DNA of 64,000 nucleotides from Epithemia pelagica (GCA_946965045.2 OX337236.1:3348001-3412000); one strand, 5' to 3'. Counted from the first letter of the stretch, positions 1 through 64,000 are shown. The notes: generated by a model not told the origin, from the sequence alone. Numbers and translations: made by a program.

Positions 1-1
1 G

Positions 2-502
2 GAGTATTTGTACTATGCAACACCCTGTGACAGTGATGTGACAAAAAAGGAGATAGGCTTGACATTCATTTCTTTCTCACCCACCTGGACCACTCATTTG
101 GAGTTGAGGCTTTCCAATGCACGAAGATCTTGTGCAGTGGTTGCCGTGGGATCTTGTCTGGTTGTGGCGGGAGGAGCATGGGTCAATTCAACCGTGGAAG
201 TTCTGGATACGCACCACAACCGCGTTTGGAATCTCCCACCAGTGAATTTACCCAGGGGCTGCAGTATGGTGACTGCTGCCAATCGAATTGCTGTGATTGG
301 TGGAGGGCACAATCCTTCGTGTACGACATTACCACTAATGGATAGGAATTCGTGGTGTTTTCGTCGACTCTGTGAGCAGCAATCGAACGGATGGTATCAT
401 TCTCTTGAAGGTATGGGTATCCGAGATGCTGATATCTCACCCTTCTCCACACCGACATTAGCTTGTAAACGAAAAAGGCCTAATACTCACCTCGGTGATT
501 AA
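2..502 (+). CDS. Kelch-repeat protein K1 (3' part only; 5' end outside window)
   Basis: Open frame from window edge: EYL..ATPCD...SFSPTWTTH...CAVVAVGSCLVVAGG...VEVLDTHHNRVWNLP...VIGG...LPLMDRNSWCFRRLCEQQSNGW, colinear with the C-terminal half of the other paralogs. Confidence 0.9.
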   Translation, partial: EYLYYATPCDSDVTKKEIGLTFISFSPTWTTHLELRLSNARRSCAVVAVGSCLVVAGGAWVNSTVEVLDTHHNRVWNLPPVNLPRGCSMVTAANRIAVIGGGHNPSCTTLPLMDRNSWCFRRLCEQQSNGWYHSLEGMGIRDADISPFSTPTLACKRKRPNTHLGD

Positions 503-1900
503 GGAGAGAATGAAACTTGAAATCTGCTACGTATTGCATGTACGTCCTGACATTGGCAGAACTAAAGCATTATCATTTCGTTCTCAAATCGTAGTTGTAT
601 TGTTTTCTTCATGACATTGCGAACTATTATTGAGATATCATGTACTCCGTTGTAAAGTTACACCATAGTGGAGCCAGTCCTTTGGTAGATGTCGATGGGA
701 CCATGCCTTTCCGCTGTTGAATAGGCCGAGTTATCATGCTGTGGAGGATTATGGTTGCGTGCCTGAAACACTTGGCGCAGCGACGGTCGACCATGCGTTA
801 AACTGTGAGGTCCGGTCCTTCTATGGCCCATGCCTACTACGTGAGAGGACAGTACACCGTCTCTCGATGCTCGTGGTGGTTTTGGGTGACAGGACATTTG
901 CGAATCCTTGGGAATTTTTGCCACCGAAGTGTTCGATAGTTCCTCCAATACAGCAACTATACTTTATCATGAGGTCGGCAAATTGATTGCGTCGATCCAG
1001 CAATCAGTCTCTCCGTAGTGGCTCGTTGACAGTCCATGGGTATCGGTCCATGAGGATCCACAAGAACAATCGCAGTGTGCAAGGTTATGTGTTGCCCCTC
1101 AATGCCAGTTCCACCGAAACCTTGTTGCACGATTGCAACACTGTCGAACAGCACTGTTGGACATGGACCACTACAACGTTTGTGCCTCGTACAGCACCAC
1201 CAAAACCACGACCCGCGCCGATCATGCCTTGGCTGTCGTCTAACAGCAGCGTTGGACCTCGATCACTACCACATTGGAGTCTCGTACCGAACTCAGAAGT
1301 ACCAACAACAAATGTGTTGGACCTCGATCACTACCACAGTTAAGCCTCGTAGCGAACTCTGCAGTACTAACCACAAAACCACGACCACGAACGGCGTCGA
1401 TCATGTCTTGTCTGTCGTCTAATAGAACTTGTTTTGTTGTTGTTGTTCTTCTTCTTCGTTGGATTCTGGTTGGCGTTGCTGCCTTGTCGTTCCACACCGA
1501 CACCCAGCTTGAATCTTCGTATGTATTAAACTTGAAGGGGCGATGCGACCCTTTCCCATGATCAGTTCTTCACTACTCCAATCGGACGCATCAGGAGGGA
1601 GTTAAATTGCGTTCCATACTTCAATCCATAGTACTGCGCTCCTCGTCACCGGCGTAACTACCTCCAATGGGGCGACTTTGTGATCGATTCAGCAGGTCCT
1701 CATGTTGTCATGTCGAGAAAGGGTCCTCGAAAATTGGCGACCAGACTGCCATGCGGTGCCACAACACAAAGAGATTTGCGTGGTCTTGTTGTTGATTCTC
1801 GTTCCATGAAAGACATGTGGATGAGGAAGCATACAATCGCCCTAGTGCTCTTCTTTTTGTTGTTCTGTTCTTTGCTGCACTAGACCTCCTGTTGCGAATC
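500..1900. repeat. Inter-Kelch spacer module D, copy 1 (others ~11280-12720, ~55110-56490, ~62780-64000; boundaries approximate)
   Basis: Shared tracts such as acttgaaat(c/t)tgc..cgtattgcatg and cgatccagcaatcagtctctccgtagtggctcgttgacagtccatggg recur in all four copies. Confidence 0.85.
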
Positions 1901-61539: not shown

Positions 61540-62769
61540 ATGACTCTGAAAGAACAAGCATGGCAGTCGGGCCTTTTCCTTTCAGACGAGACAGCAGAAT
61601 GGAATGAAAACGACTGGCCTCCTCTTCAGGGTGGATGGCGTTATCTTCATGCTACGGTCGTACTCGATCATCTCGACAAGGAACTCCACAACGACAACAA
61701 CAACGGACAAACTGTTGTCGTGTTGGGAGGACATCAACAAGGTCAAGGTGATGTCAATTCCGTTCTGTTATTGAATCTGGCAGACCCAGACATGCAATGG
61801 CGAGAGGGTCCGCCCATGAACAAGAGTCGTGAAGGACATGCCGCTGCTGTGTGCAACGGAGCCGTCTACGTGATGGGAGGATACGATGAAGGTCCATTGG
61901 ATTCTATTGAGCGAATCGATGCCAATGATTTGCTGCAATCACCCTTAACAACCAGCAACAAACATGAGACGCATTGGACGACATTGACATGTCGCTTATC
62001 AACGACAAGAAATGGATGTTGTGCTGTTGCGGTGCACAACCGATACATTGTTGTAATGGGTGGATGGGATGGAAGGCAAAGGTTGTCGTCGGTGGATATT
62101 ATTGATACCAGGAACCACACTGTCACTCCGGGGCCAAGCATGGCTGTTCCTCGATCTTTTTGTGCCAGTGCGGTCATTGGACACCGCATCTTTGTCGTTG
62201 GAGGCCAAAACACTGATGACTATCTTGACTCGGTGGAGTATTTGGACTTTGCAACACCCTCTGACAATGATGAGACAAAAAAGAAGACTGGATCAACATT
62301 CATTTCCTTATCGTCCACCTGGACCACTCATTCTGATTTAGTGCTTTCCAATGCACGAAGTTCTTGTGCAATGGTTGCCGTGGGATCTTGTCTGGTTGTG
62401 GCAGGAGGATGGGGCAATTCAAACGTGGAAGTCTTGGATACGAACCGCAACCGCGTGTGGAATCTTCCACCATTCGGAAATCACCGTGCTGGATGCAATA
62501 TGGTGACTGTTGCCAATCAAGTTGCCGTTATAAGTGGCTTTGGCAATCTTTCCTGTGCAACATTTGGAATAATCGACAAGAATACGTGGTGTTTTCGTCG
62601 TCTCTGTGAACAGCAATCGAACGGATGGTATCATTCTCTTGAAGGTACGGGTATCCATGATACTGATATGTCACCCTTTTTTTCCTCGACATCCGGGTGT
62701 CTTTTGGGGGAAGGAATGAATATCCAACATGCTGATATTTCGAGCAAGGCCGGAGACACGCCGTGGTGA
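61540..62769 (+). CDS. Kelch-repeat protein K14 (chimeric, frameshifted tail)
   Basis: Kelch blades; ATG 61540; tail joins two tail types and lacks 32 nt relative to K12. Confidence 0.93.
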   Translation: MTLKEQAWQSGLFLSDETAEWNENDWPPLQGGWRYLHATVVLDHLDKELHNDNNNGQTVVVLGGHQQGQGDVNSVLLLNLADPDMQWREGPPMNKSREGHAAAVCNGAVYVMGGYDEGPLDSIERIDANDLLQSPLTTSNKHETHWTTLTCRLSTTRNGCCAVAVHNRYIVVMGGWDGRQRLSSVDIIDTRNHTVTPGPSMAVPRSFCASAVIGHRIFVVGGQNTDDYLDSVEYLDFATPSDNDETKKKTGSTFISLSSTWTTHSDLVLSNARSSCAMVAVGSCLVVAGGWGNSNVEVLDTNRNRVWNLPPFGNHRAGCNMVTVANQVAVISGFGNLSCATFGIIDKNTWCFRRLCEQQSNGWYHSLEGTGIHDTDMSPFFSSTSGCLLGEGMNIQHADISSKAGDTPW

Positions 62770-64000
62770 TGAAGGGAAGGATGGAACTTGAAATTTGCAA
62801 CGTACTGCATGTATGTCCTACCATTAGCGGAACTAAAGCATTATCATTTTACTCTCAAACAGTAGTTGTATTGTTTTCTTCATGGCATTGCAACCTATAG
62901 AGATATCATGTACACCGTTGTACTAGTAGAAAATGAAAGTTACACCATCCGGCATGAAACCGCAAACAGGAGTAAAGCCAGGCCTCGGGTAGATGTTCAT
63001 GGTACCATGCCTCTCTGCTGTTGAATGGGTCGAGTAATCATGCTGTGGAAGATAATGGTTGCGTGCCTGAAACACTTGGGCGCAGTGACTCGTTTGGACG
63101 GTCGTCTTCTTCCCGACCATGCGTTGAATTGTGGGGTCCGGTCCTTCTACTAGTATGGCACATGACATTACCCCATCTCTCGATGCTTGTGGTTTCGGGT
63201 GACAGGACATTTGCGAACCCTTTGGAATTTTTGTGACACCATCGTGTTCGATATTTTCTCCAATACAGCAACTATACTTGATCATGAGGTCGGCAATTTG
63301 CATGCGTCGATCCAGCAATCAGTCTCTCCGTAGTGGCTCGTTGACAGTCCATGGGTATCGGTACATGGACAATCGCAGTGCGCAAAGTTATGTCTTGCCC
63401 CTCAATGCCAGTTCCGCGGAATCCTTGTTGCACGATTGCAACACTGTCGAACAGCATTAGTGTTGGACATTGCCCACTACAACCTTTGTGCCTCGTACAG
63501 TACCAACAACAAAACCACGACCACGAATGGCGCCGATCATGTCTTGGCTGTAGTCTACTAGAACTTGTTTTGTTGTTGTTCTTCTTCTTCGTTGGATTCT
63601 GGTTGGTGTTGCTGCCTTGTCGTTCCACATCAACACCCAGCTTGAATCTTTGTATGCAGACTTGAAAGGGCGATGCGACCCTTTCCCAGAATTATTTCTT
63701 CACTCTTCACTACTCCAATCGGGCGCGTCGGAAGGGAGTTGAATAGCGTTCCATACTTCAATCCATAGTACTGCGCTCCTCGTCACCGGCGCAACTACCT
63801 CCAATGGGGCGACTTTGTGATCGATTCAGCAGGTCCTCATGTTGTCATGTCGAGAAAGGGTCCTCAATAATTGGAGACCAGACTGCCATGCAGTGCCACA
63901 ACACAAAACACAAAGGGATTTGCGTGGTCTTGTTGTTGATTCTCGTTCCACGAAAGACATGTGGATGAGGAAGCATACCATCGCCCTAGTGCTATTCTTT

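What the first reader, a model, noticed from the sequence alone, without database searches (positions are those of the whole stretch)
1..64000. Candidate diatom immune-like locus: diversifying Kelch array with embedded TIR (WxxxE) and PLD-nuclease genes
Seen: 14 co-oriented Kelch loci with high birth-and-death turnover. The only other recognisable non-TE genes are a TIR-only gene and two HKD-family genes, plus ankyrin-like remnants. Established: TIR domains with the catalytic Glu are NAD+-cleaving immune signalling enzymes in plants, animals (SARM1) and bacteria (Thoeris); single-HKD Nuc/Zucchini-like proteins are nucleases used in piRNA biogenesis and in bacterial defence; tandem arrays of mosaic repeat-domain receptors typify NLR/LRR clusters. 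Inference: Kelch propellers act as a variable sensor repertoire and TIR/PLD as effectors. I know of no described Kelch-TIR-PLD cluster in diatoms, but cannot check this.
Basis: partly seen in the sequence, partly recalled or inferred. Interest (0 to 1): 0.85.

Follow-up and report, generated by a model that had tools for sequence, protein, structure and literature searches.

The report
Diatom Kelch gene array with passengers
This window is a piece of a huge, fast-turnover tandem array of Kelch-propeller genes in a probable diatom genome. A beheaded LRR-TIR gene and a PLD-type gene have been copied along with the array, so it is a candidate, but so far unproven, immune-like gene compartment.

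Summary
The observation largely holds.
- There are 14 co-oriented Kelch loci: nine full-length or nearly so (three with aberrant or shortened C-tails), one stop-trimmed, one nonsense-broken, two 5' fragments, one cut by the window edge.
- There are two near-identical single-HKD PLD genes, one TIR ORF with the WxxxE glutamate, and a young copia retrotransposon.
- No ankyrin remnant was found.

Three corrections apply.
1. The "TIR-only gene" is the 3' third of a ~1000-aa RI-type LRR-linker-TIR gene. Its LRR part is gone and the ORF is fused to array spacer. A second degraded relic lies at 42.5-42.8 kb.
2. The Kelch family has more than 120 paralogs on 20 contigs of the same assembly. Variability sits in the predicted substrate-binding loops, but pN/pS there is about 0.9 and no positive selection was shown.
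3. The PLD coding sequence is grafted at its ATG onto a Kelch-type upstream region.

Copies of the PLD (12 sequences, 7 contigs) and of the truncated TIR (3 contigs) lie on the contigs with the biggest Kelch arrays. In two other genomes the PLD homolog has housekeeping neighbours, and in a further genome two LRR-TIR genes have no Kelch gene nearby. In this assembly, TIR-only paralogs also lie away from Kelch genes.

Best reading: co-amplification by unequal recombination. Physical linkage is real in this genome. Functional coupling between Kelch sensors and TIR/PLD effectors is not shown.

The parts
2..517 (+). Kelch locus K1, C-terminal 166 aa only (cut by the window start)
   Evidence: tblastn aa 235-400, 61% identity
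6121..7338 (+). Kelch K2, intact, 405 aa
   Evidence: Pfam Kelch_1 111.5 bits
10113..11294 (+). Kelch K3, intact, 393 aa
22434..23621 (+). Kelch K4, 395 aa, C-terminal tail diverges from the family
   Evidence: aligned only to aa 384
30283..30675 (+). Kelch K5, N-terminal fragment (aa 1-137) ending at a duplication junction
31183..31683 (+). Kelch K6, N-terminal fragment (aa 1-175)
32336..33460 (+). Kelch K7, 374 aa, shortened tail
35365..36567 (+). Kelch K8; a stop at 36472-36474 trims the last ~31 aa of the tail
39397..40614 (+). Kelch K9, intact, 405 aa
45019..46221 (+). Kelch K10, intact, 400 aa (used as reference copy)
50417..51631 (+). Kelch K11, intact, 404 aa
53907..55124 (+). Kelch K12, intact, 405 aa
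58081..59274 (+). Kelch K13, 90% identical to K10, broken by an in-frame stop at 58705-58707
61540..62769 (+). Kelch K14, 409 aa, variant C-terminal tail
3321..4091 (+). PLD copy 1 (256 aa, single HKD-type domain); Tyr at an otherwise invariant Asp (aa 114)
27711..28481 (+). PLD copy 2 (256 aa); R66C, F84S, V85G at conserved sites
2251..5406 (+). 3.1-kb segmental duplicate carrying PLD copy 1. Its first ~1.07 kb (2251-3320) is a Kelch-type upstream region, with homology to the K10/K13 upstream regions ending at the ATG.
26648..29778 (+). Second copy of the 3.1-kb PLD-bearing segment (96.1% identical)
48739..49761 (-). 340-aa ORF. About aa 114-340 are the linker end, TIR domain and C-tail of an LRR-TIR gene. 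About aa 1-125 are array spacer, not LRR.
49412..49503 (.). 43-bp tandem duplication at the truncation breakpoint of the TIR gene
42459..42826 (-). Degraded, frameshifted relic of a second LRR-TIR family gene (linker plus start of TIR)
13548..20980 (+). Young copia-type LTR retrotransposon. LTRs 13548-13792 and 20736-20980 are 99% identical. gag-like ORF 14495-16357 and pol ORF 16364-20614 (RVT_2) are in one frame.

Best explanation
The window is a stretch of a very large, lineage-specific tandem array of intronless, about 400-aa Kelch-propeller genes in a probable diatom genome. The propellers are six-bladed and KLHL-like, with no BTB or F-box domain. They carry a conserved C-terminal tail with a KRAR-type basic patch.

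The array grows and decays by unequal and ectopic recombination (shown). Evidence includes shared spacers, truncated copies at duplication junctions, a nonsense-broken copy, a 2.9-kb block 96.8% identical to another contig, and a fresh copia insertion.

Other coding sequences that fall into a repeat unit are carried along (shown):
- A conserved diatom single-HKD PLD gene was grafted at its ATG onto a Kelch upstream region. It now exists as at least 7 full-length and several broken copies on array-bearing contigs.
- An RI-type LRR-linker-TIR gene lies in or at the edge of several arrays. In the window it survives only as a beheaded TIR ORF plus a small relic.

Function (inferred):
- The Kelch proteins are soluble protein-binding modules with a conserved scaffold. 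Their B-C and D-A loops, the substrate-binding face in KEAP1/KLHL proteins, drift almost freely.
- The full-length LRR-TIR proteins are plausible self-contained sensor-plus-NADase receptors.
- The PLD is a plausible Nuc/Zucchini-like phosphodiesterase.
- Linkage of the three is best explained by co-amplification, not by a conserved signalling module.
For: - 14 co-oriented copies with 62-68% pairwise aa identity. The repeat map shows shared spacers and duplication junctions.
- More than 700 family hits. The top 120 (at least 60% identity) lie on 20 contigs of one assembly.
- Arrays were fetched on five other contigs.
- K10 against its copy on ctg1300l has dS 0.011 over only 2.9 kb, while the neighbouring TIRs have dS 0.9.
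- Truncated TIR: only aa 774-1006 of the 1006-aa paralog match. The ORF's first 125 aa match spacer in L012 and L022. A tandem duplication sits at the breakpoint.
- LRR_6+TIR architecture in relatives.
- The TIR tree puts the six same-assembly members in one clade with 96/88 support.
- PLD upstream homology to the Kelch upstream region ends at the ATG.
- The PLD cluster has 12 members on 7 contigs, and 6 of those 7 contigs are among the 20 carrying the top-120 Kelch paralogs. Two further near-identical truncated TIR ORFs lie on two other Kelch contigs.
- PLD homologs in two other genomes have housekeeping neighbours.
- Other-genome LRR-TIRs have no Kelch gene within 10 kb.
- Kelch variability: entropy in the B-C loops is 1.60 against 0.80 bits over 107 paralogs. 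pN/pS is 0.90 in loops against 0.47 in the core.
Against: - Recurrent linkage of all three gene kinds in one genome, and a PLD placed under a Kelch-type upstream region, would also be expected if they had been recruited into one co-regulated system.
- PLD ORFs are more conserved (0.9% divergence) than their flanks (3.1%).
- TIR dN/dS is 0.2-0.5. The passengers are therefore not simply decaying.
- Adjacency of the PLD and TIR copies to Kelch genes on the other contigs was not verified, because look-ups were exhausted.
- Some copies may be alleles or homeologs rather than paralogs.
Confidence: 0.62

Rival explanations
1. First reader's model. The locus is a functional immune-like module. Variable Kelch propellers sense non-self and signal through TIR (NAD+ cleavage) and PLD (nuclease) effectors encoded among them.
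For: - The TIR fold has the catalytic Glu conserved across the family.
- The PLD fold has H, K and GSxN conserved.
- Kelch variability is concentrated on the substrate-binding loops.
- TIR-family genes lie in or at four arrays.
- The PLD sits behind a Kelch-type upstream region and has been amplified on array contigs.
Against: - The window's TIR lacks the family's N-terminal domains.
- Full-length relatives carry their own LRR sensor.
- There is no synteny in other genomes.
- Three arbitrarily chosen array samples (about 10 Kelch genes) have neither TIR nor PLD.
- A single capture suffices phylogenetically.
- No excess of nonsynonymous change was found.
- There are no expression or interaction data.
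Confidence: 0.13
2. The Kelch family is an expanded set of substrate adaptors or decoys, comparable to the F-box-Kelch, F-box and MATH-BTB expansions of plants and nematodes. It acts on its own against foreign or selfish proteins. TIR and PLD are irrelevant neighbours.
For: - The closest solved relatives are the Kelch domains of the KLHL12, KLHL20 and KEAP1 ubiquitin-ligase adaptors.
- The scaffold is conserved and the B-C and D-A loops are hypervariable.
- Gene turnover is high.
Against: - No BTB, F-box, SOCS/BC-box or other ligase-docking domain was found by Pfam.
- Loop pN/pS is about 0.9, not above 1.
Confidence: 0.15
3. The array is mostly non-functional amplified DNA, or an assembly or haplotig artefact that inflates the copy number.
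For: - Overall dN/dS is high, about 0.5.
- There are many fragments and broken copies.
- Several arrays lie near contig ends.
- Near-identical copies occur on other contigs.
Against: - The 14 copies within one contiguous window differ by 32-38% in protein sequence, so they are not assembly duplicates.
- 73 of 390 codons show a significant nonsynonymous deficit, and core pN/pS is 0.47, so purifying selection acts.
- Most copies keep long intact ORFs.
Confidence: 0.08

Closest known systems
Plant TNL/NLR resistance-gene clusters
   Same: - Tandem, co-oriented, birth-and-death arrays of repeat-domain genes, with truncated and mosaic members.
- TIR domains with the catalytic Glu. The family profile hits Roq1, L6, RPV1 and RUN1 TIRs at 1e-9 to 1e-8.
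   Different: - No NB-ARC or NACHT domain anywhere.
- The arrayed gene is a Kelch propeller, not an LRR protein.
- The TIR is C-terminal to RI-type LRRs.
- No positive selection was demonstrated.
Lineage-specific expansions of ubiquitin-ligase adaptors (plant F-box-Kelch, nematode F-box and MATH-BTB families; own knowledge, Thomas 2006)
   Same: - A large tandemly duplicated family.
- A conserved scaffold with variation focused on the substrate-binding surface.
- KLHL-like Kelch repeats.
   Different: No F-box or BTB domain was detected, so the link to a ligase is unknown.
Animal Toll-like receptors, SARM1 and bacterial Thoeris ThsB / AbTir TIR NADases
   Same: - LRR-then-TIR domain order.
- TIR fold (Foldseek: AbTir, MAL, MyD88, SARM1).
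- WxxxE glutamate.
   Different: - No signal peptide or transmembrane segment.
- LRRs are of the cytosolic ribonuclease-inhibitor type (LRR_6).
- The region after beta-D diverges from canonical TIRs (Pfam covers only positions 1-84).
- Enzymatic activity is untested.
Single-HKD PLD-superfamily nucleases (Nuc, Zucchini/MitoPLD, PLD3/4; bacterial DrmC, DpdK)
   Same: - One PLD domain with H, K and GSxN.
- Foldseek TM 0.68-0.72 to Nuc, Zucchini and FAM83.
- Weak profile hits to Nuc, mZuc and DrmC/DpdK.
   Different: - The Asp of the HKD motif is Ser or Thr in the whole diatom family.
- There is an extra conserved ~80-aa N-terminal region and a basic NPYxKK tail.
- FAM83, a non-catalytic PLD fold, is the top structural hit.
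- In other genomes the homolog lies among housekeeping genes and does not look defence-linked.
Brown-algal LRR-ROCO and NB-ARC-TPR candidate immune receptor families (PMC11378527)
   Same: A stramenopile lineage-specific, rapidly diversifying repeat-protein family proposed as immune receptors on genomic grounds only.
   Different: Different domains (ROC-COR GTPase or NB-ARC there) and diversification by exon shuffling. Here the genes are intronless and diversify by tandem duplication.

Membership tests
Kelch-repeat beta-propeller (Pfam Kelch_1 / KLHL-type) | Repeated ~45-50-aa Kelch motifs scoring above the Pfam threshold; six blades, each with a GG doublet | tested here: met
   Kelch_1 scores 111-116 bits against a cutoff of 20.1. 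Six blade GG motifs appear in the consensus. The best PDB relatives are the KLHL12, KLHL20 and KEAP1 Kelch domains.
BTB-Kelch or F-box-Kelch ubiquitin-ligase adaptors | An N-terminal BTB/BACK or F-box domain joined to the propeller | tested here: not met
   Pfam finds only Kelch-type families in K2 and K10. The N-terminus before blade 1 is only ~30 aa.
TIR domain | Pfam TIR/TIR_2 score at or above the gathering threshold | tested here: inconclusive
   The window ORF scores 20.9 (cutoff 21.3) and 22.3 (cutoff 28). Paralogs and orthologs P0163, P0165, P0166, P0168 and P0183 score above the cutoff.
TIR domain | Flavodoxin-like alpha/beta TIR fold | tested here: met
   The AF2 model has pLDDT 76. 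All 50 listed Foldseek PDB hits are TIR-domain structures, the top ones with probability 1.0 and TM up to 0.56 on the target, over ~108 columns.
NADase-competent TIR (SARM1, plant TNL, AbTir type) | Catalytic glutamate in the alpha-C helix (WxxxE context) | tested here: met
   W118 and E122 are invariant in 23 family members. The profile alignment puts them on the Roq1 and L6 'WCLxEL' motif.
NADase-competent TIR (SARM1, plant TNL, AbTir type) | NAD+ cleavage activity; self-association through an upstream oligomerising or sensor domain | not testable with these tools
   The window copy has lost the LRR and most of the helical linker. No enzymatic data are available.
NLR (NB-ARC or NACHT with repeats) | A central STAND NTPase domain | tested here: not met
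   No NB-ARC or NACHT in the window ORFs or in the full-length LRR-TIR relatives.
Toll-like receptor | Signal peptide, extracellular LRRs, a transmembrane helix, a cytoplasmic TIR | tested here: not met
   There is no transmembrane-like segment outside the TIR beta-strands, and no hydrophobic N-terminus. The LRRs are RI-type LRR_6.
PLD superfamily, single-HKD nuclease type (Nuc/Zucchini) | HxK(x)4D(x)6GSxN motif | tested here: inconclusive
   H173 is invariant, K175 is present in at least 90% of members, and G186-S187-x-N189 is conserved. The Asp position is Ser or Thr in the family.
PLD superfamily, single-HKD nuclease type (Nuc/Zucchini) | PLD fold with one domain per chain | tested here: met
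   The AF2 model has pLDDT 84. Foldseek gives FAM83 2e-8, PLD3 7e-8, Nuc 2e-7 (TM 0.68) and Zucchini 2.4e-7 (TM 0.70). Pfam PLDc_2 scores 25.8, just below the cutoff of 27.
PLD superfamily, single-HKD nuclease type (Nuc/Zucchini) | Homodimeric active site; nuclease or phosphodiesterase activity | not testable with these tools
   No multimer prediction or assay was available.
Conserved defence gene cluster (a Kelch-TIR-PLD system as a unit) | The same gene kinds linked in independent genomes or lineages | tested here: not met
   PLD homologs in two other genomes have housekeeping neighbours. Two LRR-TIR loci of GCA_051400955.1 have no Kelch gene within 10 kb. The linkage is seen only within one assembly.

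The most novel reading that the evidence does not exclude
A diatom lineage has built a private innate-immunity compartment. Hundreds of Kelch propellers with free-running binding loops would serve as a recognition or decoy repertoire. They would be genetically coupled to cytosolic RI-LRR-TIR NADase receptors, and co-regulated, through shared Kelch-type promoters, with a Nuc/Zucchini-like PLD nuclease recruited from a housekeeping locus.
Probability: 0.13. Interest if true: 0.85.

Novelty: new variant of a known kind. Interest (0 to 1): 0.55.

Why it matters
Almost nothing is known about receptor-level immunity in diatoms. The paper library held no report of a diatom Kelch expansion or of a Kelch-TIR-PLD linkage. 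A 2025 paper states that TIR-based antiviral systems had not previously been described in microalgae (PMC12489294).

This locus gives concrete, testable candidates:
- a family of cytosolic LRR-TIR proteins with the catalytic Glu;
- a PLD-fold enzyme that left a housekeeping context and was amplified behind Kelch-type upstream regions;
- a very large propeller family whose variability maps to the ligand-binding face.

If the linkage is only hitch-hiking, the locus is still a clear example of how tandem arrays capture, promoter-swap, amplify and behead unrelated genes.

Tried and rejected
- Ankyrin remnants: no Pfam hit in 15 spacer ORFs. No tblastn hit from the Ank-TIR relative P0172.
- Giant-virus or viral origin of Kelch or PLD: no relatives in the viral contigs.
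- Traces of the PLD's ancestral neighbours (FEN1, Rpb8, Cwc15, biotin-lipoyl, HSF) beside the window copies: none.
- Retrocopy signature after the PLD: no poly(A) run seen.
- Metagenome scan for further TIR loci with flanks: only two contigs under 3 kb, uninformative.
- Positive selection on Kelch: no sliding window above 1. In the parsimony per-site test, 3 sites showed nonsynonymous excess and 73 showed deficit. This test is conservative and ignores recombination.
- Telomere repeats in arrays near contig ends: none.
- tRNA or Rfam RNAs in the window: none.
- Species identification through accession strings in papers: nothing.
- A possible 3' intron or second exon of the TIR gene (GTAAGT at ~48791; downstream frame conserved in P0163 and P0198) was noticed but not resolved.

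
Full report
**What is in the window**

Base composition is even, at 0.46-0.54 GC, and there are no Ns. A tblastn search with one Kelch ORF finds 14 loci, all on the + strand. That is about one per 4.6 kb. Pairwise protein identity is mostly 62-68%, and one recent pair (K10/K13) is 90% identical.

Pfam gives strong Kelch_1 and KLHDC2/KLHL20-type hits and nothing else, so there is no BTB and no F-box. 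The closest solved relatives by sequence are designed Kelch propellers (SAKe6), followed by the natural Kelch domains of KLHL12, KLHL20 and KEAP1.

The state of the 14 copies:
- Nine are full-length or nearly so. Three of these have aberrant or shortened C-terminal tails.
- One is trimmed by a stop in the tail (36472-36474).
- One is broken by an in-frame stop at 58705-58707.
- Two are N-terminal fragments that end at duplication junctions (30283-30675, 31183-31683).
- One is cut by the window edge.

The self-comparison shows that units share their spacers. It also shows several segmental duplications.

A copia-type LTR retrotransposon lies at 13548-20980. It has an RVT_2 domain and 245-nt LTRs that are 99% identical, so it is a recent insertion. 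No tRNA or Rfam RNA is present.

**Scale of the Kelch family**

The database search returned more than 700 relatives. The best 120 have 60-97% identity. All come from one ENA assembly (ERZ21939226) and lie on 20 different contigs of 42 kb to 1.36 Mb. Four contigs carry 16-17 of them each, and the window's own 451-kb contig carries 17.

Fetched pieces of five other contigs show the same co-oriented arrays. On a sixth (ctg1346l) a single Kelch gene lies beside ordinary housekeeping genes near the contig end. On ctg1176l the array ends against CRAL_TRIO and aquaporin genes.

The window is therefore a sample of a genome-wide amplification, not a special locus.

The organism is probably a diatom:
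- The labelled PLD homologs are from Licmophora paradoxa (MMETSP1360) and a Bacillariaceae MAG.
- Others are MMETSP transcripts.

**Is the Kelch family diversifying?**

I used 21 intact coding sequences from the window and four loci. The median pairwise dN/dS is 0.51. No 20-codon window exceeds 1; the range is 0.33-0.96.

Amino-acid variability is sharply localised:
- It falls in the eight residues after each blade's GG doublet (the B-C loops).
- It also falls in the residues just before strand A (the D-A loops).
- With 107 paralogs, B-C loop entropy is 1.60 bits against 0.80 elsewhere.
- 17 of the 40 most variable columns fall in B-C loops, where 4.8 would be expected.

By established knowledge of KEAP1 and KLHL structures, these loops form the substrate-binding face.

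pN/pS is 0.85 in B-C loops and 0.99 in D-A loops. Together they give 0.90 (bootstrap 0.75-1.09), against 0.47 (0.38-0.54) in the rest of the propeller. A parsimony per-site test finds 3 codons with nonsynonymous excess and 73 with deficit, out of 390.

The shown fact is a constrained scaffold with loops evolving at about the neutral rate. Positive selection is neither demonstrated nor excluded. The tests are simple and ignore gene conversion, and the D-A columns were picked after seeing the entropy.

**The TIR gene**

The 340-aa minus-strand ORF (48739-49761) scores just under the Pfam TIR thresholds.

An exhaustive HMMER search found only 26 representative relatives in 1.8 billion proteins. 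Several of them pass the Pfam thresholds.
- The long ones (708-1160 aa) are LRR_6 (ribonuclease-inhibitor type) repeats, then a helical linker, then TIR.
- One relative is Ank+TIR.
- Many are short, with linker plus TIR only.

Evidence that this is a TIR domain:
- The family alignment has invariant Trp and Glu four residues apart, seen in the window as W-C-I-A-E.
- A family profile hits plant TNL TIR domains (Roq1 9e-10, L6, RPV1, RUN1), AbTir and SARM1. It aligns that Glu on their catalytic Glu.
- An AlphaFold model (pLDDT 76) retrieves only TIR structures.

TIR identity and the WxxxE claim therefore hold.

The gene in the window is nevertheless beheaded:
- It matches only residues 774-1006 of the intact 1006-aa paralog on ctg1300l.
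- The first ~125 residues of the ORF match ordinary array spacer in L012 and L022.
- A 43-bp tandem duplication sits at the breakpoint.

A second, frameshifted relic of the family lies at 42459-42826, with linker plus the start of TIR. dN/dS of the window TIR against its nearest paralog is 0.51. That does not settle whether it still functions.

Two further ORFs 97-99% identical to the truncated form exist on two other Kelch contigs.

**Where TIR-family genes sit**

In the same assembly:
- Intact, inside an array, on ctg1300l.
- Split into two ORFs, inside an array, on ctg1334l.
- Intact at the edge of an array, with two more fragments between Kelch genes, on ctg1176l.
- About 7 kb from a single divergent Kelch gene (36% identity), among polyamine genes, on ctg1362l.
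- Two TIR-only genes with no Kelch gene within 10 kb, on ctg1340l.

In another genome (GCA_051400955.1), two LRR-TIR loci have no Kelch gene within 10 kb.

Three array samples chosen without regard to TIR (L014, L021, L022) hold about 10 Kelch genes and no TIR domain.

In a TIR-domain tree the six same-assembly sequences form one clade (96/88). It is sister to a clade that includes both members from the other genome, and the array-edge gene is basal. One capture followed by co-amplification is therefore enough to explain the linkage.

The first two array loci were also not independent samples. I reached them through the closest paralogs of K10.

**The PLD genes**

The two 256-aa ORFs lie in a 3.1-kb segment duplicated at 96.1% identity. 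They differ at 7 nucleotides, 6 of them nonsynonymous. Several changes hit otherwise conserved residues:
- Asp114 to Tyr in copy 1.
- R66C, F84S and V85G in copy 2.

Yet the ORF is less diverged (0.9%) than its flanks (3.1%).

The family is a conserved, full-length, ~250-280-aa diatom family. It has invariant His, near-invariant Lys and a G-S-Y-N-Y motif. The HKD Asp is replaced by Ser or Thr.

The AlphaFold model (pLDDT 84) matches single-domain PLD folds: FAM83, PLD3, Nuc, Zucchini and restriction-enzyme PLD domains. Profile hits to Nuc/mZuc and to the bacterial DrmC/DpdK are weak. "Nuc/Zucchini-like" is thus a fair description of the fold. Nuclease activity is inference.

Context of the PLD:
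- In two other metagenome-assembled eukaryotic genomes the homolog sits among housekeeping genes. One has FEN1/XPG, Rpb8, Cwc15, GPI mannosyltransferase and Patched. The other has HSF, RFC, a biotin-lipoyl protein and PC-esterases. Neither has Kelch or TIR nearby.
- In the window, the ~1.07 kb upstream of each PLD ATG is homologous to the region upstream of Kelch genes K10 and K13. Identity is 95% over 0.8 kb and then gapped. The homology stops at the start codon.
- About 0.8 kb of unique sequence follows the stop. It shows no poly(A) run and no relic of ancestral neighbours.

So the PLD coding sequence replaced a Kelch coding sequence in one array unit.

An exact-cluster look-up shows 12 PLD sequences of at least 90% identity, 7 full-length and 5 pieces of broken copies. 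They lie on 7 contigs of the assembly, and 6 of those 7 are among the 20 contigs carrying the top-120 Kelch paralogs.

The PLD has therefore been co-amplified with the arrays, and it too undergoes birth and death. I could not fetch those other loci because look-ups were exhausted. Their adjacency to Kelch genes is inferred from contig identity only.

**Interpretation**

Shown:
- A very large birth-and-death tandem array.
- Recombinational exchange between arrays. K10 and its ctg1300l copy have dS 0.011 within a 2.9-kb block, while the TIR genes 2 kb away have dS 0.9.
- Capture, promoter swap, amplification, truncation and decay of two unrelated genes inside it.

Inferred: the Kelch proteins are soluble binding modules, with no transmembrane segment or signal peptide and a KRAR-type basic patch in the tail. 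They have a free-running binding face. The full-length LRR-TIR proteins are self-contained cytosolic sensor-NADase candidates. The PLD is a phosphodiesterase.

- The window's TIR has lost its sensor domain.
- The family has its own LRRs.
- There is no synteny outside this genome.
- One capture suffices.
- Most sampled array units have neither partner.

Recurrent linkage, and a PLD driven by Kelch-type upstream sequence, keep a co-regulated defence compartment possible. I put that at roughly one in eight.

**Caveats**

- The assembly may separate haplotypes or homeologs, so copy counts are upper bounds.
- Gene calls in the loci are prokaryote-style and ignore introns.
- No expression data were available.
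- The literature search covers only open-access papers. It found no description of a diatom Kelch expansion or of Kelch-TIR-PLD linkage.

Noticed in passing
window 14495-20614: The gag-like ORF (14495-16357) and the pol ORF (16364-20614) of the young copia element are in the same frame, separated by a single stop. This is either a read-through arrangement or one inactivating mutation.
   Followed up: no
window 48739-48760; L012 13259; L013 13721: The TIR proteins of this subclade end in a CaaX-like tetrapeptide (C-V-T-S, C-L-T-S, C-V-T-F). This hints at prenylation and membrane anchoring. More distant relatives do not share it.
   Followed up: partly
window 48480-48800 (minus strand): A GTAAGT follows the codon for Tyr-Gly near the end of the TIR ORF. 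A downstream reading frame (N-R-F-Q-I-Q-T-V-G-W...) is conserved in P0163 and P0198. There may be a 3' intron, alternative end or read-through variant.
   Followed up: partly
window 44503-47418 vs L012 9483-12401: A 2.9-kb block is 96.8% identical between contigs (Kelch dS 0.011) and is embedded in much more diverged flanks. This points to recent ectopic exchange between arrays, or divergent haplotypes.
   Followed up: partly
L021 (ctg1346l end), L014, L022, L016: Several arrays lie within 10-70 kb of contig ends, and one contig stops inside an array. No telomere repeats were seen. Arrays may break the assembly or lie near chromosome ends.
   Followed up: partly
window 60011-60919 and 8368-8799: A 302-aa hydrophobic ORF lies in a spacer and has a homologous stretch in another spacer. 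It has no Pfam hit, and it is unclear whether it is coding.
   Followed up: partly
L011 8549-10843: Two TIR-family genes lie in tandem (431 aa and 280 aa) outside any Kelch array, beside ABC1, Gar1 and WD40 genes. The family therefore also exists as native short linker-TIR proteins.
   Followed up: partly
L018 3625-7827 (minus strand); L022 18280-21194: Large ORFs (1400 aa and more than 1147 aa) without Pfam hits lie next to Kelch or TIR genes. They may be unclassified mobile elements.
   Followed up: no
Kelch C-terminal tails, e.g. window 46040-46218: All intact copies share a ~60-aa tail after the propeller (W-C-F-R-R-L-C-E-Q-Q ... K-R-A-R ... acidic end) of unknown function. Several copies in the window differ mainly by damage to this tail.
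   Followed up: no
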